Shown here: positions 21,276-49,700 of the stretch, one piece after another
Position numbering within the stretch: the stretch's first letter is position 1
Layout of the letters: every line of letters begins with the position of its first letter
Assembly: GCF_963921235.1 (NCBI RefSeq)
Contig: NW_026948187.1
Location: 1,426,001-1,490,000 of the forward strand
DNA: 64,000 bases
Reading direction: 5' to 3'
Source: Mobula hypostoma
Lineage: Eukaryota
Notes under the pieces: model-generated
Told to the model about the DNA's origin: nothing
Databases searched by the model: none
The model's input: the letters and a program-made list of their open reading frames with translations, nothing else
Made by a program: the position numbers and the translations under genes

Positions 21276-22570
21276 TGCCACAATGGGGGCGCTGGTAGCG
21301 GACCCAAATACAAGACACAGACACTGAAGTACTAGAACAGGACAAGGATGCAGGACCTGGGCTAAGACATGGACAAGAAACAGGGAAACCGGACAAGGAA
21401 CTATGAACTAGGAGCCTGGGCTAGGGAGAGCGGGACCACGACTAGAAACTATGGACTAGGAGACAAGGCCTGGACTCCGAGCCAGAGACTGGACAAGGAC
21501 CCAGAACCTGAGTCTTGCCTTGGGCTCGGACCCCAGAACCAGGCAAGGACATGACGTGGCTGGGGTCTTGGCTCTTGACGCTTGAGCCTGGGGTCTTGGC
21601 TCTTGAACTTGGAGACAGGCTGGGGTCTTGGCTCTTGACTTGGAGACAGGCTGGGGTCTTGGGTCACGAGGCTGCAGGCAGGGGTCTTGGGACTTGGAAT
21701 GCGGAAGCTGATATCTCGGAGGCTGGAGCTTGGAGACAGACTGGGAAATGTGCATCAACATAGAGCCGGGAGTTATCCTTCGAAAAGGTGGGACTCATCT
21801 TTAACATGACACCAACATGAGACAAGACAGTACATAGACATAGAACCGGGATTATACTTAGACAAGTCGAGAATCAACCTCTCCACACCAAGGTGGGACA
21901 GGACCATCCGTCGGGTAACGGCAGAACTACTGGACTTACCCAACAGAGGCAAAGACAAAACAAGACAGGTCCCCCAATCAGGGCAACAGCAGAACGTCCC
22001 GACTTACCCCATGGAGGCGAGGACAAGACAAGACATGACATCCCCCTGCAGGGCAATGGCAGAACGGCCTGACTTACCCCACGGAGGCGAGGACAAGAAG
22101 AGACAAACACCAAAGAACGACAGACAGTTCCATCTCTGCATCGGGGTTGCTCCGAGTAGCAGTTATGGCCAGCAAACTCGGCTGGCTACGGAAACAGCCC
22201 GATCTCTATCTAGCTCGGAGTGACTGACGGCCACTCGGCTGGCTCAGGAAACGGCCGAATCCATACTGCAAAGACAGCTCCAACTACTGACAGCAAGGCT
22301 CAATGAGGGAATGGTTCCCCAATCACGGCCTAAAGATGGCAAGTGGCCGCTCCAGCCTTCCATCGGCAGGTTGCTCCCAGGGGATCTTGACAAGACAAAT
22401 CAGCAGCCCACACTCAACCCCAAGGCTACTTATATTCCAAGACCCAAGTTGAGAATCAGGTGCCTATGAATAATTCAACCAAAGGAAGGGACAGCTGGAA
22501 GACCCAGAGTCCCGAGTCCACGGACCAGACCGTGAAGCAGAATGCGAACTTCACGGACCAGACCATAACA
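21276..22570. mobile_element. Solo LTR (~1.3 kb) with internal tandem repeats
   Basis: TG...CA ends; 5-bp TSD TGAGA at 21271-21275 and 22571-22575; ~30-bp repeats 21560-21700 and ~72-bp repeats 21890-22100. Confidence 0.75.
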
Positions 22571-22593
22571 TGAGAACTCATCTGGGAGTTAAA

Positions 22594-22595
<2 letters not shown>

Positions 22596-22630
<35 letters not shown>
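22596..22630 (+). repeat. (CA)n microsatellite
   Basis: Direct observation. Confidence 0.95.
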
Positions 22631-22633
<3 letters not shown>

Positions 22634-23029
22634 GTCTTCAGCACTTCTCTTCCACACAAAGAACACCTCTTCCACACGGAGTTTTAGTAGTGCTGCCTTT
22701 TCCACTGTTTCTCTTCTCTCATTTAATTTAAAATAAGAAATAGATTAAGCTATGTAGCATTTGAAGTATGAAGTGTAGGTATAAATGAAATTATCAGTAT
22801 TATTGTTGTTGTAATATTATTATACTGCAATAAGATTGACAAATGGAGAAAATAAATTGATTCACTCACCAATCAGTGAGAGAAGTGACAGTGACGGGAT
22901 GAGGCAATCCTTCTGATGTCGGGACTGTATTCTGTTGTGGGAATCCTGAGGCACTGGCCGAGATGTGCATTGGAGAGTCTGTTTCTGTCCTGGTTCTTGA
23001 TAGAGTTCTTTGAAGAAAACGATGACTCA

Positions 23030-23280
23030 CATATGTACACTCCTCCGCTAAAACCTCGACTCTTCTTGTTGCCATGTTAGCTGACAATGGCACCGTCTTT
23101 AATAGCTCCACAACTGTTTTCTTGGTTTTCTCATCATGACTTAAGACTTCGCCAACTGTATCAATTGCACATGTTTTAATCAACTCGGCATCAGCGAATC
23201 TTAGCTTTGGCAAGATTCCATGACACATGCAATGATGCAGCTGTTGTGCTCTCTTGTGCAGATGTTGACTTATAGCTAAT
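23030..23280 (-). mobile_element. hAT (Buster/Charlie/SPIN-like) transposase fragment
   Basis: FADAELIKTC...LLKTVPLSANMATRRVEVLAEE matches the F.DGELIK.C...PLS..TV.RRI pattern. Confidence 0.7.
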
Positions 23281-23415
23281 AGAAATGGAGTGCTTTATGA
23301 TGTTATTATATTTGTGATTTTTTGTTAGCGTTGATCTGATTTTGCAGGGTATTTGGCATTGAAACTGGCAGCATGCGTATTGTTGAAGTGCCGCTTTAGA
23401 TTTTCTGTTTTGCAG

Positions 23416-23931
23416 ACAGCCACGGCAGCGGCAGATCTACTGACCATCGTGCTTGCGGTGATATTGTGGCGGTTCAGTTATTATTACTTCCCCGGGATTT
23501 TCCTGGACATCACCCCCGTGTGCAGTGTGATCTCTGTCCTGGGAAAGGGAGTCACAGAAATTTCTGTCTGGTTCACCGTCACTTTTACTTTTGATCGGTT
23601 TGTCGCCATTTGTTGCCAGAAGTGGAAAATAAAATATTGCACCGGGAAAACTGCAGCTGTGGTTCTGACAACAACCGGCGTTCTGCTCTGCTTTAATAAT
23701 GTGCCCTTCTTCTTTATATATCATCCTGTGGAAGTGGTTGACAATATACCCTGGGACTGTATTGAAATACCGGGCTACTATACGGATCCTGGGTGGATGG
23801 GATATCACCGGCTTTCTACCGTCCTCACGCCAATACTCCCGTTCGTGTTAATACTACTGTTCAACGCTCTGACAGTCAGACACATTTTAGTGACCAGTCA
23901 CGTCCGTAAGGGGCTGAGGGGTCAAACCAAG
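23416..23931 (+). pseudogene. GPR139/GPR142-like class A GPCR fragment (TM2-TM5)
   Basis: AADLL (TM2), SVWFTVTFTFDRFVAIC (TM3, DRF), KYCT, PILPFVLILLFNALTVRHI (TM5); frame open, but no TM1 and cut by an LTR before TM6. Confidence 0.8.
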
Positions 23932-24401
23932 AGACAGAGGATGGACAAGGTGCTGTGAGTCCGCTAACACGGTCGGACCCCGCGCAGGAGTCCGAGGTCC
24001 AGGGTGTTCAGCGAGGAGAGGAGACGGACTCGTGTGGCGCGTCTGGTCGACCATTGTTGTTGGTCCCAGCCGGCAGGTCGAGGTGGTCCGAGGGAAGACG
24101 CAGGGTGAAGAAGGAGCGTCCTGAGCTCCAGCTGTTTGTGCACGAAGAGATAGAACTTTGATGGGTGTGGTGCCTTTTATTTTCCTTTTATATTTTATTC
24201 TTCATTAATTATATAGTTCCAGTAATATCTATAAAAATGTAATTCATTTAATCGTATCTGGTGTACTGTCTGTCATTTGGGCGGGGTGGGGTACATCACA
24301 CCGCATCCACACAAACTAATTACCCAGTTTGGCAGGGCCGAGGGCTGTTTCCCTAGACGACCGCGAGCTGAGCGACCCTGAGGCTGGCCATGGGGGCTAC
24401 A
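23932..24401 (+). mobile_element. Gypsy 5' LTR (5' part missing)
   Basis: Direct repeat of ~26415-26892; ends GGGGCTACA. Confidence 0.9.
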
Positions 24402-24403
24402 TC

Positions 24404-24446
24404 TGGGGGCTCATCCGGGATTTGAACCCAGGACCTCTCGCACCCC
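24404..24446 (-). other. tRNA-Pro PBS extended to a 43-nt copy of the tRNA 3' half including CCA
   Basis: TGGGGGCTCATCCGGGATTTGAACCCAGGACCTCTCGCACCCC is complementary to tRNA-Pro positions 76-34 with two CpG-type transitions. Confidence 0.85.
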
Positions 24447-24915
24447 GCCAGCTTCTTCCACCCTGACCTGAAAAGCAGCAGGTAAAGGATGTTCCGCCTC
24501 CAGTTTTTTTCTTCCTGATGACTTCTTTTTGGTCGACTTTCAGTTTTTCCACTTCATTTAAACTGTCGATAGTATCTTTTCCGAGGTCTGTCCTCCATTG
24601 CTTCATCTCCTCTGGAGTGTAGTCAAACTCCCCTCTCTGGGCTCTCGGTTTTCTGTTCGCCTTAGTCAGACCACTTCCTTGATCTTCCCCAACTTGTAAG
24701 TCTTCCAATCTTTTCCGGATTAATTCATCAGTACATGACCACAGTGTCGGCTCGGAATTCTGTTTCTCCTCACGGTCTCTCCTCCAACTCCCCGCCAAAA
24801 GCCCCTGGTTCCCAGCCATATGTTCCATCAACAGGAAATTCAACTGGTATGTCCGGTCATTTTTCTCACATTGCACCAAACATCGCCAGTCAGTCCTGCA
24901 GACACAGAAGACTGT
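24447..24915 (-). other. Captured antisense stop-free reading frame of unknown protein (~156 codons)
   Basis: Frame open across the whole insert (VFCVCRTDWRCLVQCEKNDRTYQLNFLLMEH...EFDYTPEEMKQWRTDLGK...KKKTGGGTSFTCCFSG); not gag/pol-like. Confidence 0.55.
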
Positions 24916-26218
24916 TATGGGAGAAGTACTTTGTTCATTATGGCCTCCCCCGGTGGATCCATAGTGATCAGTGACGGGACTTCGAGAGCAGACTTATCCA
25001 TGAATTACTGGGTATGCTTGGGTTTGAGAAATCCAGGACCACACCCTATCACCCGCAGAGTGATCCTCAGCCCGAGAGGTTTAACCGGACCCTGCTGGAC
25101 ATGCTCGGCACTGTGGCGATCGGATAGAAGAGTAAGTGGAGTCAGCCCATCGGCCATTTGGTTCACTGTTACAATTGTACTCGCAATGACGCTACGGGGT
25201 ACTCGCCTTATTATCTGACGTTCGGGCGGGAAGCGAAGTTGCCCATTGACCTGTGCTTTGGGACTGAAGTGGGTGAATTACCTTTGAAGCCATATCTGAA
25301 GTATGTGTCCGATATAAGGAGAGAGTTGAAAAGGGCGTACGAGTTAGCTGAGACGGCAGCCACCAAGCAGAATTAGAGGAAGAAGAAGAGGTATGATCAA
25401 AAAGTAAAATTCTCCCAACTATTGCCGGGAGACCGGGTCTTTATCCGGAATTTAGGACTACCTGGTAAGCCCAAGTTGGCTGATCGCTGGGCGGCCACCC
25501 CTATGTGGTAGAGAGCCAGATGCGGAATCTGCCTGTTTACTGGGTGAGACCCGAGGATGGGAAGGGGCCTGTCAATGTACTCCATCGGAACCACTTGTTG
25601 CCTCTGGGTCGAGAGGTGAAGGTAGACCCAGAGCCCGAATGGGAGTTTAGTATGAGGACTCTGCAAGGGCGCAGGGCGAGGGAAGAGCCCGCTGCGAAAG
25701 GGACGGGGCCGGTCCCCACCCCGAAAAGGGATACGTCATCGGAAGACGATGATTCGGACGTGTGGCACCTCTTTCCGTTCACTGATTCCCCGGTACCGGA
25801 AGAAGAGGCCCCTGGCCCTTCCCCCACTGAGTTAGGGGAGAGGAGGGAGGGTGCTGAGGAGCCGCCTGAAATACAGCCGGCATTGGGAAAAGAGAGGGTG
25901 AAACCAGAGCCCGAGGCAGAGGGCTCACAGGTGCCGAGGGATCCCAGTGAGGGTGAGGGTCCGACAGGTAGGCCCGGAGTGTCACCTGTGGAGTCTGAGC
26001 CGGAAGAGTCAGCAGAGTAAGTACAGAGGTCTCAGAGGAGTAGGCACCCCCCGGAGAGGTTGACTTATACAGTGCCGGGAGAACAGGGTGTGATCTCCAC
26101 AACCCTGGGAAGTTATGTCACTGCTTTATGCACCTGGGTTGGGTGTTGTGTTTTGTAAGGAGAAATGGTGAACTCTGTTAATATCATGAGGACATGAATT
26201 TTATTTGGTGGGGAAGAG
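24916..26218 (+). mobile_element. Gypsy integrase C-terminal half, 3' region and PPT
   Basis: YFVHYGLPRWIHSDQ, SRTTPYHPQ, ERFNRTL, YN...TGYSPYYLTFGRE, acidic tail; scattered stops; PPT GGTGGGGAAGAG ending 26218. Confidence 0.9.
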
Positions 26219-26892
26219 TGTTAGGCGTTTCTTCTTTGTCATGTTATAATTGAAATGGCTTCTTTGTTGTGTTAACTGCTGAGAACGTCCTCCCGCTAGC
26301 AGTTGGATTGGATTACGTACGGATAAGAGGGTGAACAAACCAATTGGGATAGATGTTATTCTTTCTGTGTGTCTGTAAGTTACTGTGATGCGCGTTTTTG
26401 GGAGAAGGCGGGAGAGAGACAGAGGATGGACACGGTGCTGTGAGTCCGCTCACAGGGTCGGACCCCGAGCAGGAGTCCGAGGTCCAGGGTGTTCGGCGAG
26501 GAGAGGAGACGGAGACGGACGCATGTGGGGCGTCTAGTCGACCATCGTTGCTGGTCCCAGGTGGCAGGTCAAGGTGGTCCGAGGGGAGACGCAGGGTGAA
26601 GGAGGAGTGTCCTGAGCTCCAGCTATTTGTACACTAAGAGATAGAACTTTGATAGGTGTGGCGCCTTTCATTTTCCTTTTATATTTTATTCTCTATTAAT
26701 TATATAGTTCCAGTAATATCTATAAAACTGTAATTCATTTAATTGTATCTGGTGTATTGTCTGTTATTTGGGGGGGGGGGTACATCACACTGCATCCACA
26801 CAAACTAATTATCCTAGTTTGGCGGGGCTGAGGGCTGTTTCCCCAGACGACGGCGAGCTGAGCGACCCTGAGGCTGGCCAGGCGGGGCTACA
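26219..26892 (+). mobile_element. Gypsy 3' LTR
   Basis: TGT...ACA directly after the PPT; matches the 5' LTR. Confidence 0.9.
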
Positions 26893-32860: not shown

Positions 32861-32997
32861 ACCAGTGTAGCATCTCACCAGAGGTATTGGTTGTGTCATC
32901 AGTCAGACAACTGCAAGATTTTCTCTGTCAATCAGCTTCCAAATGTTGCTACTCTGTCATTTGTTGCCACGACCCACTGCTGATTCCCTTCTCCTCA

Positions 32998-34212
32998 TCA
33001 TACGTTCTCCCCAGTGTGAACTGACTGGTGTGTCAGGAGATAAGATGACTGAGTGAATCCCTGCCCACGGTCTGAGCAGGTGAATGGCCTCTCCCCATTA
33101 TGAACTGACTGGTGTGCCAATAGGGTGGATGGCTGTGTGAATCTCTTTCCACAGTCTGAGCAGGTGAACAGCTTCTCCCCAGTGTGAACTCGTTGGTGAC
33201 TCTGTAGGTGGCATGACTGAGTGAATCCCTTCCCACAGTCTGAGCAGGTGAATGGCCTTTCCCTAGTGTGAACTGATTGGTGTCTCTGTAGGTTGGATGA
33301 CCGAGTGAATCCCTTCCCACAGACTGAGCAGGTGAAATCCCTCTCTGCAGTGTGAACTGACTGATGTGTCAGTAGGTGAGATGCCTGAGTGAATCCCTTC
33401 CCACAGTCTGAGCAGGTGAATGGTCTCTCTCCAGTGTGAACTCGCTGGTGCCTCAGTAGATGAGATGACCGAGTGAATCCCTTCCCACAGACTGAGCAAG
33501 TGAATGGCCACACCGCAGTGTGAACTGACTGGTGGGCAAGTAGTTCAGATGACCGAGTGAATTCCTTCCCACAGTCTGAGCAGGTGAATGGCCTCTCCCC
33601 AGTGTGAACTGACTGGTGTCTCAGTCGATCAGATGACCGAGTGAATCCCTTTCCACAGTCTGAGCAGGTGAATGGCCTCTCCCCAGTGTGAACTGAATGG
33701 TGTGCCAATAGGGAGGATGACTGAGTGAATCCCTTCCCACAGTCTGAGCAGGTGAATGGCCTCTCCCCATTGTGAACTCGCTGGTGTACCAGTAGTTTGG
33801 ATGACTGAGTGAATCCCTTCCCACAGTCTGAGCAGGTGAACAGCTTCTCCCCAGTGTGAACTCGTTGGTGAATCTGTAGATGGGATGACTGAGTGAATGT
33901 CTTCCCACAGTCTGAGCAGGTGAATGGCCTCTCCCCGGTGTGAACTGACTGGTGTCTCTGTAGGTAGGATGACCGAGTGAATCCCTTCCCACAACCTGAG
34001 CAGGTGAAATCCCTCTCTGCAGTGTGAACTGACTGATGTGTCAGTAGATCAGATGACCGAGTGAATCCCTTCCCACAATCTGAGCAGGTGAACGGCCTCT
34101 CCCCAGTGTGAACTCGCTGATGTACCTTCAGTTTAGATGAGCAAGTGAATCCCTTCCCACAGTCCGAGCAGGTTAACGGCCGCTTCCCGGTGTGAACTCG
34201 TTGGTGAGCCAT
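32998..34212 (-). CDS. C2H2 zinc-finger protein ZNF-B, 13 intact fingers plus 1 degenerate
   Basis: 404-aa ORF of CxxC-x12-HxxxH repeats with TGERPF-type linkers; acceptor at 34623; in-frame upstream TGA 34249-34251. Confidence 0.92.
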
Positions 34213-35059
34213 TAGGTCAGATGACCGAGTGAATCCTTCCCCAGAAATTCAGCAGAAAGCCAGACTCTGCCCAGTGTGAACTGTCAGGTGAGTCCACAGG
34301 TGGGAAGACCGACTGAATCCCTTCTCACACACAGAACAGGTGAACACACATATCAGCCCAGTGTGAACTTGCTGATGTACCTTCAGTTTAGATGACCGAG
34401 TGAATCCATTCCCACTGTCTAATGAGCAGGTGAATGGCCTCTCCTGTGTAAAATGACAGGCCTGCCAGTCAGTCAGATGATTAAGTGAATCCCTTCCCAC
34501 AGTCTGAATAGGAAGGATGGTTGATTGAATCCCTTGCTCCACTTCTTAAATATCTTGACAGAGTCTGCAAAAGTGATTTGTTATGTTTGAATTCCCATGC
34601 ACAATTTCCTTGTCATTTTTAACCTGTAAAAAGATTTACAAAATACATCAATGGGTGAAGGACAACATTTCAGTTGAGATCACTTTAGTTGCCAAGCTGA
34701 AGAGAGAAATTATCTTTTAACTGGGCACAATGCTGGTATCTGGAATGACCATCAAACTCTCTGATGCTCTTCCTGTCTTGAAAGAATGCGGCATTGTTGC
34801 CATCTCCAAGCTTTGACCTGGCTGAGTTTGACTCTCTCCACTGGTATTATTCCCTGTTTCTACTGAGCTGCATGGGTTCCTGGCCCCAGTAACTGAAACA
34901 CTCTCACACAAATAGCCTTTGTTAACTTGCAGCTGGGATTTTCTTGTATTTACTGTTAATTTAAAGTCCCACAGTTTTAACGCCATGTAAATATCTCCTA
35001 CTCAGATGTACGGTTGGTCTGCACAGCTGTTAAAAGGAATTAGAGTGAATATTAGTATT

Positions 35060-45036: not shown

Positions 45037-45480
45037 TATCTCAGATCCAGAATACTAAACTCCAGTCCCATTAAAGGTGAATGTGCAGCAGAAGAAACTT
45101 CTCCCATGTCCAGTGACCAGGGTGCGGAACAGCAATAATTACACAGCTCAGCACCGTCAGACACTCTCGAAATAGCGTTCAGCAATGGTGATGCATAAGT
45201 ATCCAGAATGCAGCTTACTGAAACTCTCTCCCCAGTGTGAACCCCGTAAGGTGTCACAAGGTTAGATAACTGAGTGAATCACTTCCCACATTCACAACAG
45301 GTGAATAGTTTCTCCCCTGTGGGAACTCAATGATGCTTGATTTGGCTGAGAGAATTTCTTCCTTAACTCTTAGTAGGGGATCGGACCAGTATGAACTCGC
45401 TGGTGTCTCAGTAGTTGAGATAACCGAGTGAATCCCTTCCAACAGTCTGAACAGGTGAACGGCCTCTCCTCAGTGTGAAC

Positions 45481-46755
45481 TCACTGGGGTACCAGTAGGT
45501 AGTATGACCGAGTGAATCCATTCCCACAAACTAAGCAGGTGAATGCCCACTCCCCGGTGTGAAGTGACTGGTGTCTGAGTCGCTGAGATGACAAGGTGAA
45601 TCCCTTCCCACAGTCTGAGCAGGTGAACAGCCTCTCTCCGGTGTGAACTCGCTGATGTACCTTCAGTTTAGATGAGCAAGTGAATCCCTTCCCACAGAAT
45701 GAGCAGGTGAATGGCCTCTCCCCAGTGTGAAGTCGCTGGTGAGCCTTTAGGGTGGATGACTGAGTGAATCCCTTCCCGCAGTCTGAGCAGGTGAATGGCC
45801 TCTCTCCAGTGTGAACTCGCTGATGTTCCTTCAGTTTAGATGAGCAAGTGAATCCCTTCCCACAGTCTGAGCAGGTGAACGGCCGCTCTCCAGTGTGAAC
45901 TCGCTGATGGTCCTTCAGATTAGATGACCAAGTGAATCCCTTCCCACAGTCTTTGCAAGTGAATGGCCTCTCTGCAGTGTGAACTCGCTGATGTACCTTC
46001 AGTTTATATGAGCAAGTGAATCCCTTCCCACATTCTGAGCAGTTGAAATCCCTCTCTGCAGTGTGAACTCGCTGATGTACCTTCAGTTTATATGAGCAAG
46101 GGAACCCTTTCCCACATTCTGAGCAGGTGAAATCCCTCTTTTCAGTGTGAACTGACTGATGTGCTTGTAGGTGGGATGACTGAGTGAATCCCTTCCCACA
46201 GTCTGAGCAGGTGAACGGCCTCTCTCCAGTGTGAACTCGCTGATGTTCTTTCAGTTTAGATGAGCAAGTGAATCCTTTCCCACAGACTAAGCAGGTGAAT
46301 GACCTCTCTCCAGTGTGAACTCGCTGATGTACCTTCAGTTGAGATGAGAAGGTGAATCCCTTCCCACAGTCTGAGCAGGTGAATGGCCACTCCCCGGTGT
46401 GATCTGACTGGTGTCCCAATAGGGAGGATGATTCAGTGAAACCCTTCCCACAGATTAAGCAGGTGAACGGCCGCTCCCCTGTGTGAATTGACTGGTGTCT
46501 CTTTAAGGAGGATGATTCAGTGAATCCCTTCCCACAGACTGAGCAGGTGAATGGCCTCTCTCCAGTGTGAACTCGCTGGTGAGCCATTAGGGTGGATGAC
46601 TGAGTGAATCCCTTCCCACAGTCTGAGCAGGTGAATGGCCTCTCTCCAGTGTGAATTCGCTGATGTACCTTCAGTTGGGATGACCAAGTGAATCCCTTCC
46701 CACAGTCTGAGCAGGTGAACGGCCTCTCTCCAGTGTGAACTCGCTGGTGAGCCAT
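45481..46755 (-). CDS. C2H2 zinc-finger protein ZNF-C, 14 intact fingers plus 1 truncated
   Basis: 424-aa ORF; acceptor at 47168; in-frame upstream TGA 46792-46794. Confidence 0.92.
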
Positions 46756-49700
46756 TAGGTCAGATGACTGAATGAATCCTTCCCCACAAATTCAGCAGAT
46801 GACCAGACTCTGCCCAGTGTGAACTGACTGGTGTGTCCATAGGTGGGAAGACCGACTGAATCCCTTCTCACACACAGAACAGGTGAATGGCCTTGTCCCA
46901 GTGTGAACTTGCTGATGCACCTTCAGTTGAAATGACCGACTGAATCCATTCCCACTGTCTAATCAGATGAATGGGTCCCCCCCCCCCCCGTGTAAAATGA
47001 CAGGCATGCCAGTCGTTCAGATGATCGAGTGAATCCCTCCCCACAGTCTGAGCAGGAAGGATGATCGAGTGAATCCCTTGTTCCACTTCTTAATTATTTG
47101 GACAGAGACAGCAAAACTAGCGTGTTGTGTTCGAGATTCCCGTAGACAAATTCCTTGTCATTTTTAACCTGTAAAAAGATTTACAAAATCCATCAATGGG
47201 TGAAGGACAGTATTTCAGATGAGATCACTTGAGTTGACCAGGAATGATCTGACAACACACTGTTACAGAGAGGTTCAACCCAAGCTGGGGAGAGAAATCA
47301 CCTTCTAACTGGGCACAGCGCTGGTATCTGGAATGACCATCAAATTCTCTGATGCTTTTCCTGTCTCTAAAAGAATGGGGCATTTCTACTGTCTCCAATC
47401 TATGACCTGGCTGAGTTTGACTCTCTCCATTGGTATTATTCCTTGTTCCCACTGAGCTGCATGGGTTCCTGGCCCCACAGTAACTGAAACACTCTCACAC
47501 AAATAGCTGGCAGTGCATTCCACGCACCACCACTCTCTGTGTAAAAAAACTTTCTCTTGACATCCCCCTCGGTATCTGTTTCCAAGCACCTTAAAACTAT
47601 GCCCCTCATGCTAGCCATTTCCGCCCTGGGAAAAAACCTCTGGCTGTCTGCACGATAAATGCCCCTCATCATCTTATCCATCTAAAAAAGGCTCTAAACA
47701 TAAACAAGGAAATTATACATTGAAGATTTGTTAGTATACAAAATTTTGAGGGTATAGATAGGGTAAATGCAAGCAGCTTTTTCCACTGAGGTTGGGTGGG
47801 ATGACAACCGGAGGTCATGGGTATGTGGGAGAGGTGAAAATTTAACAGGAACATGTGGAAAAGCTCTTTACTGAAATGGTCATGAGAATGTGGAATGAGA
47901 TGCCAGCACAAGTGGTGAATATGAGCTCAGTGTCACCATTTAAAAGAAGTTTGGATAGGTACCTGGATGGTAGGGGTATGGAGGGCGATGGTCCCGGTGC
48001 AGGTAGTTGCATTAGACAGCTTAAATGTTTTTTCAGCATTGACTAGATGGGTCAAATAGCCTGTTTCTGTACTGAACTTCTCCATGTTTCTATGACAGAG
48101 AAGCTGGCCAGACTTGTTTGGAAGGGAAAAGGTGGGAGTGACAATGGAGCAGCAATGGCTGGAGTTTGTGGGACCAATTCGGGAGCTGAGTGATAGACAC
48201 ATCGATACAAAGAAGTGGAAGCAGTGGAAAGGCAGGACACAACCGTGGCTGAAATGAGAATTCAAAGCCAATATGAAAGCCAAAGAGAGGGTAAATAATG
48301 ACCAAAACCTATTGGGACGCTTTTAGAAACCAACAGAAGACAACTAAAAAAAAGTCAGATGAGCTCAGTGCATGGACTCATGATATTGTAGTCATTAATG
48401 AGTCTTGGTAGCACCCATTAGAGGAACAAAATATCTGGGGCCTCAATATCTCCTGAAAACCCAGGTTCCCTGCACCAGTTACCTTTTACCTTTTATTTTG
48501 GCAGGCTCATACAAACTGGACACCCTCAAAATTTCATTTCTGAAGGCCACCCACTTACCAAGTACTCCTTTGGCAGAAAACAGCCTGTCCCAAACCACAC
48601 TTGTCAGATCCTTTCTGATACCACCAAAATTGACCTTTCTCCAACTTAGAATCTCAACCCGTTGTCCAGACCTTTCTTTTTCCATATTTACTTGGAACCT
48701 CATGACATTATGATCATTAGACACAAAGTGTTCCCATACACCAATTTCTGTCACTAGCCCTGGATCATTTCCTGATAGGTTATTGCACACTTCTACGTCA
48801 GGAATTCTATGTACTGATTAAGGGCATATTTGACAAACTCTACCCCATCTAGTCCTTTTACAGTCTGGGGGTCCCAGTCAATATATGGAAAGTTGAAATC
48901 ACTTCCTAAATCAACCCTTGTTTCTTGGCCTAGTCTGCAATCCCTCTACAAATTTGTTCCTCTTAATCCCTCAGACTGTTGGGTACAACCAAGTCCCAGT
49001 AATGGATACAATTTCATAATTCCCTGTCCTGAGCTTATTTGGCTTTCCTATGATGCTTCCTGCATTGTGATATACACAGTTCAGGACAGTCGTCACACCA
49101 TTTGATTGCTGACTTTGTCTGAGGTCTGAACAACATCTGTGTGGTGTCAATAAAACAACCTCTCTGGGATAGCGTCCTCCACCAGTACATCAGGCTGACT
49201 AATTCAATGCTGAAACGATTGTATTTCTGTGTTATATTGACTGTCCTGTTGTATATACGATTTATCATAAATTACTATAAATTGCACATTGCACATTTAG
49301 ATGGATACGTAACATAAAGATTTTTGCTCCTCGTGTATATGAAGGATACAAGTAATAAAGTCAATTGAATTCAACTCACCCTCTCCACTATCTGTTCTGT
49401 CATTCTTGCTCCCATCCCCACTGAAACTTTAGTTTAACCTCTTCCCCCCCCCCCGCCCACTAGCAATAGCCAGCCTCATCCCTAGGATATTAGTCCCCTT
49501 CTAGTTCTGTTGCCCTAACTAATTCCCTGCAACACTTTCTAAAGTGGTCCACCTGTCGTTGTGGGGGATAGCACCAAGAGTACTCTGCGATGGCTATTTA
49601 ACCTCATTCCCCTTAATGACTCTCACTCAGTTTCCTGTGTCCTGCACCTTGGGTGTAACTCACCTCTCTTCATGTCATACCTATTCCCCCCCCCCCCCCT

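What the first reader, a model, noticed from the sequence alone, without database searches (positions are those of the whole stretch)
24402..24446. Gypsy PBS runs on into the whole 3' half of tRNA-Pro, ending at the wobble base
Seen: after the LTR end (24401), 43 nt are complementary to mature tRNA-Pro from CCA to position 34, and the match stops abruptly at position 33. Established: a PBS is normally at most 18 nt because plus-strand synthesis stops at m1A58, and tRNA halves arise by anticodon-loop cleavage. The base opposite position 34 is C. Eukaryotes generally lack a tRNA-Pro(GGG) gene, but C is what RT inserts opposite inosine in tRNA-Pro(IGG). Inference: this is a fossil of reverse transcription through a hypomodified, A34-to-I edited 3' tRNA half that served as primer. 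The inosine reading rests on one base.
Basis: partly seen in the sequence, partly recalled or inferred. Interest (0 to 1): 0.8.

Follow-up and report, generated by a model that had tools for sequence, protein, structure and literature searches.

The report
Primer tRNA copied into a retrotransposon
A broken jumping gene in a ray genome carries a copy of the 3' half of the tRNA that primed its replication, a fossil of reverse transcription overshooting its stop signal; the claimed trace of an edited tRNA base does not hold up.

Summary
After the 5' LTR (23930-24401) and a 2-nt spacer, 24404-24445 is 40/42 complementary to tRNA-Pro from CCA back to position 35. Both mismatches are CpG-to-CpA decay. 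That is 24 nt beyond a normal 18-nt primer-binding site, so DNA synthesis passed A58.

The end of the match is not a clean tRNA end. The adjoining 466 nt (24447-24912) are an antisense copy of the myosin-rod cargo of a sister Ty3/Gypsy family common in rays. That cargo reads ...GGC GGG GTG on the minus strand. So 24442-24446 belong to both the tRNA copy and the cargo: a 4-6 nt microhomology. The "C opposite wobble 34" is the first base of the cargo's conserved glycine codon. A 3' tRNA-half primer is neither shown nor excluded.

Best reading: over-extended plus-strand strong-stop DNA ended in the anticodon loop. It was rescued by non-homologous strand switches onto a co-packaged sister element and back into integrase. 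This gave a defective, probably single-copy insertion lacking gag, protease and RT.

The scan's unchecked notes list similar tRNA-Leu run-ons elsewhere in this genome. The kind is known from retrovirus experiments; a germline Gypsy example is a modest addition.

The parts
23930..24401 (+). 5' LTR, ends ...GGGGCTACA
   Evidence: BLAST self-match to 26415-26892, 90.6% over 480 columns. Global alignment: 37 mismatches in 470 aligned bases, 11 of CpG type.
24402..24403 (+). 2-nt spacer (TC) between the LTR end and the PBS
   Evidence: Sequence read directly.
24404..24421 (+). Canonical 18-nt primer-binding site, complementary to tRNA-Pro positions 59-76 including CCA; one CpG->CpA change at 24413
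24422..24441 (+). Run-on copy of primer tRNA-Pro positions 58 to 39, the part that only the tRNA explains; T opposite A58; one CpG->CpA change at 24430
24442..24446 (+). Junction overlap ACCCC: complement of tRNA positions 38-35 (plus 34 if read as G) and also of the donor's GGGGT (Gly-Val codons)
   Evidence: Loose ends 'before 24442' in contigs of other copies, whose reverse complement reads GGCGGGGT-AACTGCGTCCCAGA = GGVTASQ. Protein alignments end at the Val codon 24443-24441.
24447..24912 (-). Antisense copy of the myosin heavy-chain rod cargo of a sister Ty3/Gypsy family; open on the minus strand apart from one frameshift near 24504
   Evidence: phmmer hits P0001-P0007 (best E 1.3e-23). 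tblastn places them on the minus strand. Family profile versus PDB Myosin-7, E 7.7e-18. A 1-nt length difference at 24504 in other copies.
24913..25373 (+). Integrase remnant, from about 20 aa before the HSDQ motif to the C-terminal part; frameshifted
   Evidence: Stop-to-stop translations. Weak rve_3 hit. PFV integrase, E 0.013. More than 50 contigs per run carry ordinary integrase sequence before 24913 instead of the cargo.
25484..26017 (+). C-terminal pol tail (...DDSDVWHLFPFTDSPVPEEE...), shared with the myosin-carrying sister family
   Evidence: P0005 and P0007 align to + strand 25760-25837.
26400..26414 (+). Polypurine tract-like run (GGGAGAAGGCGGGAG...) abutting the 3' LTR
   Evidence: Sequence read directly.
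26415..26892 (+). 3' LTR

Best explanation
The element is a dead rearranged copy of a ray Ty3/Gypsy retrotransposon, made in one faulty round of reverse transcription. Minus-strand DNA was primed normally by tRNA-Pro. Plus-strand strong-stop DNA did not halt opposite m1A58. It went on copying the primer to the anticodon loop, with its 3' end somewhere at tRNA positions 38 to 34. Such a tail cannot pair with the minus-strand PBS, so the normal second jump failed. The tail's last bases (..ACCC or ..ACCCC) paired instead with GGGGT in the myosin-rod cargo of a sister Gypsy element, probably co-packaged in the same particle. After 466 nt of that cargo in antisense, a second non-homologous switch led back to the autonomous element's integrase region. 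Shown: the tRNA copy, its register with the PBS, the identity and orientation of the cargo, both junction positions and the overlap. Inferred: the order of the switches, which strand was growing at each, co-packaging, and why synthesis ended in the anticodon loop.
For: The PBS plus 24-nt extension is contiguous, in register and 2 nt after the LTR end. PPT, integrase and tail all lie on the + strand. The cargo is sense to RT and to the tail in relatives (P0002, P0006, P0005, P0007, P0012, P0014) but antisense here. Its homology ends exactly at the tRNA junction...VEEAGGV. Other copies continue GTAACTGCG.. there. At 24913 more than 50 contigs per run continue with ordinary integrase sequence, so that joint is special to this copy. 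Divergence of the tRNA part (2/42, both CpG decay) equals half the LTR divergence (37/470), so the copy was perfect at about the time of insertion. Junction 31-mers occur in only 3 runs of one sample, which suggests low copy number. PMC8599865 reports that m1A58 is required for the stop and that without it RT copies more tRNA, giving a non-complementary end. PMC4997597 describes microhomology-guided 'tertiary template' patches in retroviral non-homologous recombination.
Against: No target-site duplication is recognisable, so one integration event for both LTRs is not proven. No other copy of this LTR family could be fetched, so what follows the PBS in intact members is unknown. Donor DNA at the junction is known only from 3-4 contigs plus protein alignments. 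The second junction shows little or no microhomology. 24889-24912 is not assigned to any source.
Confidence: 0.65

Rival explanations
1. One reading: the primer, or the template left attached to minus-strand DNA, was a 3' tRNA-Pro half cut in the anticodon loop. Plus-strand synthesis ran off its 5' end at position 34, which was inosine and so was copied as C.
For: The copy does end inside the anticodon loop. Extending a 3' end needs terminal pairing, so the strong-stop DNA ended within positions 38-34. A run-off at 35 or 34 would use the whole 4-5 nt overlap without any coincidence. Unchecked notes of the scan list other long tRNA run-ons in this genome.
Against: The C at 24446 is the donor's own Gly codon base, so it says nothing about position 34. 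The end point is equally explained by a pause or by where microhomology happened to exist. The other noted run-ons (34, 43 and about 50 nt of tRNA-Leu) do not share one end point.
Confidence: 0.12
2. A full-length tRNA was copied until RT stalled one base before m1G37, with the 3' end at the A of 24442. The stalled end then switched to the cargo with only 1-2 nt of homology. On this view the following CCC(C) is all donor sequence and resembles the tRNA by chance.
For: m1G37 is a general feature of tRNA-Pro and blocks Watson-Crick pairing (established knowledge, not tested here). Contigs of other copies align from exactly 24442.
Against: It needs a 1-in-64 coincidence for the next three bases. 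It also needs the same tRNA to have let RT pass A58 with the correct base.
Confidence: 0.12
3. The long complementarity is the family's normal leader, an extended PBS. The rearrangement merely cut it at 24446.
For: Some retroelements pair with their primer outside the 18-nt PBS. PMC8599865 notes complementarity up to position 54 in lentiviruses.
Against: A contiguous 42-nt match would be without precedent. The complementarity ends exactly at a rearrangement junction. An unrelated element with a tRNA-Pro PBS (L001) diverges 3 nt after the 18-mer.
Confidence: 0.05
4. The structure arose at the DNA level after integration. Nested or neighbouring insertions were joined by deletion, inversion or microhomology-mediated end joining, and the two LTRs may come from different insertions.
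For: No TSD is seen. A paralogous flank contig has 179 other letters at the site rather than a clean empty site. Microhomology is also typical of end joining.
Against: The 24 nt in register with the PBS still require copying of a tRNA annealed there. The two LTRs differ by an amount consistent with one insertion.
Confidence: 0.06

Closest known systems
Over-extended plus-strand strong-stop DNA when m1A58 is missing (Fukuda et al. 2021, PMC8599865)
   Same: RT copies the primer tRNA beyond the 18 nt. The extra bases are not complementary to minus-strand DNA and block normal completion.
   Different: That work was done in vitro and in TRMT6-mutant human cells with MLV and HIV RT, and the products were regarded as dead ends. 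Here the product was rescued, integrated in a germ line and fixed, in a Ty3/Gypsy element.
Circular MoMLV DNA with a reverse-transcribed tRNA between the LTRs (Colicelli and Goff 1986, as described in PMC12220202)
   Same: A primer-type tRNA was left attached and copied into viral DNA next to an LTR.
   Different: That case had a nearly whole tRNA-Gly acting as a spurious primer, in an unintegrated circle of a mutant virus. Here it is the 3' 38-42 nt of the regular primer tRNA-Pro in an integrated two-LTR element.
Tertiary-template 'patch' insertions and tRNA-mediated recombination in retroviruses (reviewed in PMC4997597; HITME as cited in PMC12220202)
   Same: A third template with fortuitous microhomology bridges two non-homologous junctions and replaces deleted sequence.
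   Different: In HITME the tRNA is itself the patch inside the genome. Here the patch is an antisense piece of a sister element, and the tRNA part stems from the primer.
Deletion proviruses bounded by the PBS with extra tRNA bases (Olsen and Swanstrom, J Virol 1985; recalled from memory, the paper is not in the library)
   Same: Read-through of the primer tRNA, followed by mis-annealing downstream, deletes the 5' part of the genome.
   Different: I could not check it. As I recall it there was no inverted insert, and the products came from avian retrovirus in cell culture.
PBS inheritance in yeast Ty1 and Ty3 (Lauermann and Boeke 1997, as summarised in PMC7472051)
   Same: Same superfamily (Ty3/Gypsy) and the same reverse-transcription step.
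   Different: The yeast elements are reported to inherit their own PBS strictly rather than a copy of the tRNA. This ray element shows a tRNA copy that reached the genome.
copia priming by a tRNA-iMet fragment (Kikuchi et al. 1986; from memory)
   Same: A tRNA cut near the anticodon is involved in LTR-element priming.
   Different: copia uses the 5' part, with the PBS complementary to an internal 3' end. Here the PBS pairs with the true CCA end.

Membership tests
LTR retrotransposon with a tRNA-Pro primer-binding site | Two direct long terminal repeats | tested here: met
   23930-24401 versus 26415-26892, 90.6% identity; 7.9% mismatches in the global alignment.
LTR retrotransposon with a tRNA-Pro primer-binding site | PBS within a few nt of the 5' LTR end, complementary to the tRNA 3' end including CCA | tested here: met
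   24404-24421, 17/18, 2 nt after the terminal CA.
LTR retrotransposon with a tRNA-Pro primer-binding site | Polypurine tract abutting the 3' LTR | tested here: met
   GGGAGAAGGCGGGAG at 26400-26414.
LTR retrotransposon with a tRNA-Pro primer-binding site | Target-site duplication and TG...CA termini | tested here: not met
   Flanks are ..AACCA and CGAAT..; the LTR starts AGAGACAG and ends CTACA. The copy is old and its flanks are repetitive, so this lowers certainty of a single integration. It does not change the LTR-element call.
Ty3/Gypsy (Metaviridae) | RT of the Ty3/Gypsy type | tested here: inconclusive
   This copy has no RT. The RT fused to the same cargo in the sister family (P0006 residues 1-135) hits Ty3 RT 4OL8 (E 7.5e-13) and Ty3 Gag-Pol 7Q5B, and no retroviral RT at E<=1. 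The link to this copy rests on the shared pol tail.
Ty3/Gypsy (Metaviridae) | Integrase core downstream of RT/RNase H | tested here: inconclusive
   Only a frameshifted C-terminal part of the core is left: HSDQ..TTPYHPQ..ERFNRTL, rve_3 E 0.0078, PFV integrase E 0.013. Domain order is not testable.
Fossil of over-extended plus-strand strong-stop DNA | tRNA complementarity continuing in register beyond position 59 into 58 and further | tested here: met
   24422-24441 matches positions 58-39, 19/20.
Fossil of over-extended plus-strand strong-stop DNA | Extension absent from normal members of the same family | not testable with these tools
   No other copy of this LTR family could be retrieved. 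Large assemblies give no DNA, and the one metagenome hit is unrelated.
Inosine-34 footprint | C opposite position 34 that can only have come from the tRNA | tested here: not met
   24446 is the first base of the donor's Gly codon.
3' tRNA-half primer | Copy ends at a defined anticodon-loop cleavage site, recurrently | tested here: inconclusive
   The end lies somewhere in positions 38-34. This is a single case, and recurrence is not testable here.

The most novel reading that the evidence does not exclude
In rays, Ty3/Gypsy elements regularly copy their primer tRNA far past A58, down to the anticodon loop. This would be either because 3' tRNA halves or hypomodified tRNAs serve as primers, or because these RTs read through m1A58. 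The resulting over-extended strong-stop DNAs would then be a recurrent source of rearranged and solo-LTR-plus-tRNA insertions. This copy and the scan's unchecked tRNA-Leu cases would be members of one class whose end points map tRNA cleavage or modification in the germ line.
Probability: 0.15. Interest if true: 0.7.

Novelty: new member of a known kind. Interest (0 to 1): 0.4.

Why it matters
The copy records, base by base, what a retrotransposon's reverse transcriptase did when the normal stop at the primer tRNA failed. It also shows how the stranded end was rescued: by a few bases of chance homology to a sister element. Such products are known from retrovirus cell-culture work, but they are usually taken as dead ends that never integrate. 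This one reached the germ line. It also comes from a Ty3/Gypsy element, a group whose yeast members are reported not to pass on a copy of the tRNA. A census of such run-ons in this genome could show where reverse transcriptases stop on natural tRNAs. The correction matters too: the attractive inosine signature is an artefact of junction microhomology.

Tried and rejected
- **Rfam.** A scan of 24300-24600 gave no tRNA hit for the half molecule, only a weak T-arm-like mascRNA match.
- **Cargo frame.** Pfam and the ESM Atlas gave nothing on the window's own cargo frame. Its identity came only from the exhaustive phmmer search and a family profile against PDB.
- **DNA of relatives.** Fetching DNA around P0001, P0002 and P0007 failed because the assemblies are too large. 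Donor nucleotides and the PBS of normal family members could therefore not be read.
- **Pattern scans.** An exact scan for LTR end plus PBS found one unrelated AT-rich element in metagenomes (L001) and nothing in viral contigs.
- **Read laying.** It returned only contigs of repeats. The locus itself is not covered at 24495 or 24535, so copy number and bridging contigs could not be read.
- **Integrase homologs.** The search on an integrase piece gave three short fragments only. NCBIfam gave nothing.
- **Older papers.** Olsen and Swanstrom 1985, Colicelli and Goff 1986, Konstantinova 2006, and Lauermann and Boeke 1997 are not held. They are cited second-hand or from memory.
- **Rejected readings.** A tRNA-derived SINE or tRNA pseudogene lying next to the LTR by chance is rejected, because of the CCA and the exact PBS register. 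A minus-strand orientation of the element is rejected, because there is no TGG-type PBS or PPT on that strand. Autointegration is rejected, because the junction is not at an LTR terminus.

Full report
**The element.** A self-comparison of 22001-26500 against the window finds one repeat pair, 23930-24401 and 26415-26892, at 90.6% identity. A global alignment gives 37 mismatches in 470 aligned bases, 25 of them transitions and 11 of CpG type.

The pair brackets only about 2 kb. Orientation is fixed by four features on the + strand:
- a TGG-initiated primer-binding site 2 nt after the left repeat;
- a purine run, GGGAGAAGGCGGGAG, abutting the right repeat;
- integrase remnants (..WEKYFVHYGLPRWIHSDQ / RDFES..TTPYHPQ..ERFNRTL / ..GYSPYYLTFGRE..) from 24913 on (weak rve_3 hit; PFV integrase E 0.013);
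- a pol tail at 25484-26017.

No target-site duplication is recognisable, and the LTR does not start with TG.

**The observation.** I took the human tRNA-Pro sequence with CCA from the methods of PMC12217144 and aligned it to the minus strand. Bases 24445-24404 match 40 of 42, which corresponds to canonical positions 35 to 76. Both differences (24413 and 24430 on the + strand) are CpG to CpA.

The 18-nt PBS (24404-24421) occurs once in the window with one mismatch, against 0.06 expected at three or fewer mismatches. The next 24 nt occur once with one mismatch, against 0.00 expected. The first run-on base, 24422, is T opposite A58. Base 24446 is C, opposite the wobble position, and nothing matches beyond it.

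**What lies next to it.** The minus strand is open from 24993 to 24403. Pfam and the Atlas did not recognise this frame. An exhaustive phmmer search of 24448-24912 (minus strand) found seven cluster representatives, the best at E 1.3e-23 and 71% identity.

- Two of them (P0002, P0006) begin with a reverse-transcriptase fragment.
- Two others (P0005, P0007) run on into ..DSKDDVLDVW.LPFADFP..EEE.., the same tail that the window carries on its + strand.
- A profile of the seven matches the rod of Myosin-7 in PDB at E 7.7e-18, residues about 972-1139 and 1345-1422.
- The RT part of P0006 matches Ty3 RT (4OL8, E 7.5e-13) and no retroviral RT.
- Close relatives are annotated in Mobula birostris, M. 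hypostoma, Hypanus sabinus and Hemitrygon akajei, some as 'MYH16' or 'myosin heavy chain-like'.

This is the myosin-carrying Gypsy family that many earlier notes of the scan describe in this genome. In all these proteins the cargo is sense to RT and to the tail. In the window it is antisense to the LTRs, the integrase and the tail.

**The junction with the tRNA.** A second minus-strand frame reads KKLEAEHPLPAAFQVRVEEAGGV|REVLGSNPG. BLASTP aligns it to P0001 up to ..VEEAGGV and no further. tblastn alignments of P0001, P0004 and P0007 all end at 24441. Relatives continue T(K/A)SQIEM.

On the minus strand the sequence is GGC GGG GTG followed by CGAGAGG of the tRNA. The Gly codon GGG occupies 24446-24444 and the Val codon occupies 24443-24441. 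Contigs of other copies laid on the window break away 'before 24442'. Their consensus reverse-complements to GGCGGGGT-AACTGCGTCCCAGA, which reads GGVTASQ.

Hence 24442-24446 (ACCCC on the + strand) is common to the tRNA copy (positions 38-35, plus 34 only if it was read as G) and to the donor. A Gly codon must begin GG, so the C at 24446 is what the donor supplies whatever stood at tRNA position 34. The inosine inference therefore has no support left.

**The other junction.** In each of runs X3, X5 and X6, 51-52 contigs carry ...AGGATCAGAGGGCATCCACAGTGGCCAAAG before 24913. In frame with the window's integrase this reads DQRASTVAK-VLWEKYF. So 24912|24913 is where ordinary integrase sequence is replaced in this copy. 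I see little or no microhomology there. Bases 24889-24912 are not assigned to any source: P0012 matches from ..LVQCEKND on.

**Age and copy number.** The tRNA part differs from the tRNA at 2 of 42 sites (4.8%), both CpG decay. Half the LTR divergence is 3.9%. The tRNA copy was thus essentially perfect when the element inserted.

Sampled 31-mers across 24385-24475 were found in only three runs of one sample of organism A. They were not found in three other runs of that sample or in organism B. This is weak evidence for a single-copy or low-copy junction.

**Mechanism.** PMC8599865 reports that m1A58 of the primer is required for the plus-strand strong stop of MLV RT on tRNA-Pro and of HIV RT. 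It also reports that without the stop RT copies further tRNA, giving an end that is not complementary to the other strand. The 20 tRNA-only run-on bases here are that product.

RT cannot trim an unpaired 3' end, so the strong-stop DNA that was finally extended must have ended inside the overlap, at tRNA positions 38 to 34. Its last bases paired with GGGGT of the cargo sense strand. I cannot tell which of two paths was taken:
- the strong-stop DNA copied a co-packaged sister-element RNA and then returned to minus-strand DNA at integrase; or
- an aberrant minus strand had already switched from integrase onto sister-element minus-strand DNA and then annealed 3' end to 3' end with the strong-stop DNA.

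Both paths give the observed product and both need the same over-extended intermediate. Microhomology-guided third-template patches are an established feature of retroviral non-homologous recombination (PMC4997597).

Three causes for the end in the anticodon loop stay open: run-off on a cleaved 3' half, a stall before m1G37, or chance.

**Comparison and novelty.** tRNA read-through products are known from retrovirus work, and I recall older reports of PBS-bounded deletions with extra tRNA bases. My literature searches found no report of such a germline fossil in an LTR retrotransposon, which is not proof that none exists.

The review PMC7472051, citing Lauermann and Boeke 1997, states that yeast Ty1 and Ty3 strictly inherit their own PBS, whereas retroviruses copy the primer. 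A Ty3/Gypsy-type element with a fixed tRNA copy is therefore of some interest.

Unchecked notes of the scan list further run-ons in this genome: 34, 43 and about 50 nt of tRNA-Leu, and a tRNA-Pro cDNA copy. I could not test them.

**Verdict.** The run-on interpretation holds, the inosine point is refuted, and the tRNA-half point is undecided. It is a new member of a known kind, of moderate interest.

Noticed in passing
window 32870-34403 and 45297-46900: Two arrays of an 84-bp tandem repeat, about 18 units each, roughly 11.2 kb apart, 75-90% alike within and between arrays.
   Followed up: no
window 23353-23958 (+): An open frame with a rhodopsin-type 7TM domain (7tm_1, E 1.5e-09) runs into the 5' LTR. 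Its flanks are themselves multi-copy in the sequencing runs at about 80-85% identity. One paralogous contig joins 23924 to 26926 with 179 other letters between.
   Followed up: partly
P0001, P0007, P0011-P0015 (proteins from public ray assemblies): Myosin-rod cargo of a Ty3/Gypsy family is annotated in Mobula, Hypanus and Hemitrygon as 'MYH16' or 'myosin heavy chain-like' genes. The cargo joins two separate rod segments, about residues 972-1139 and 1345-1422 of Myosin-7.
   Followed up: partly
window 24504-24510: A run of T that is one base shorter in about half of the other cargo copies. It shifts the minus-strand cargo frame in this copy.
   Followed up: partly
window 24767-24800: Other cargo copies carry extra sequence here: loose ends in 42 contigs of run X1, and joints with 4-15 letters between. 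This matches the roughly 20-aa stretch (..REETMTHLRRDQQKLKTSIQN..) present in P0001 but absent from the window.
   Followed up: partly
L001:1-700 (-): An unrelated AT-rich LTR element in a soil-type metagenome contig has the same LTR end heptamer and an ordinary tRNA-Pro PBS. It diverges from the tRNA 3 nt after the 18-mer.
   Followed up: yes
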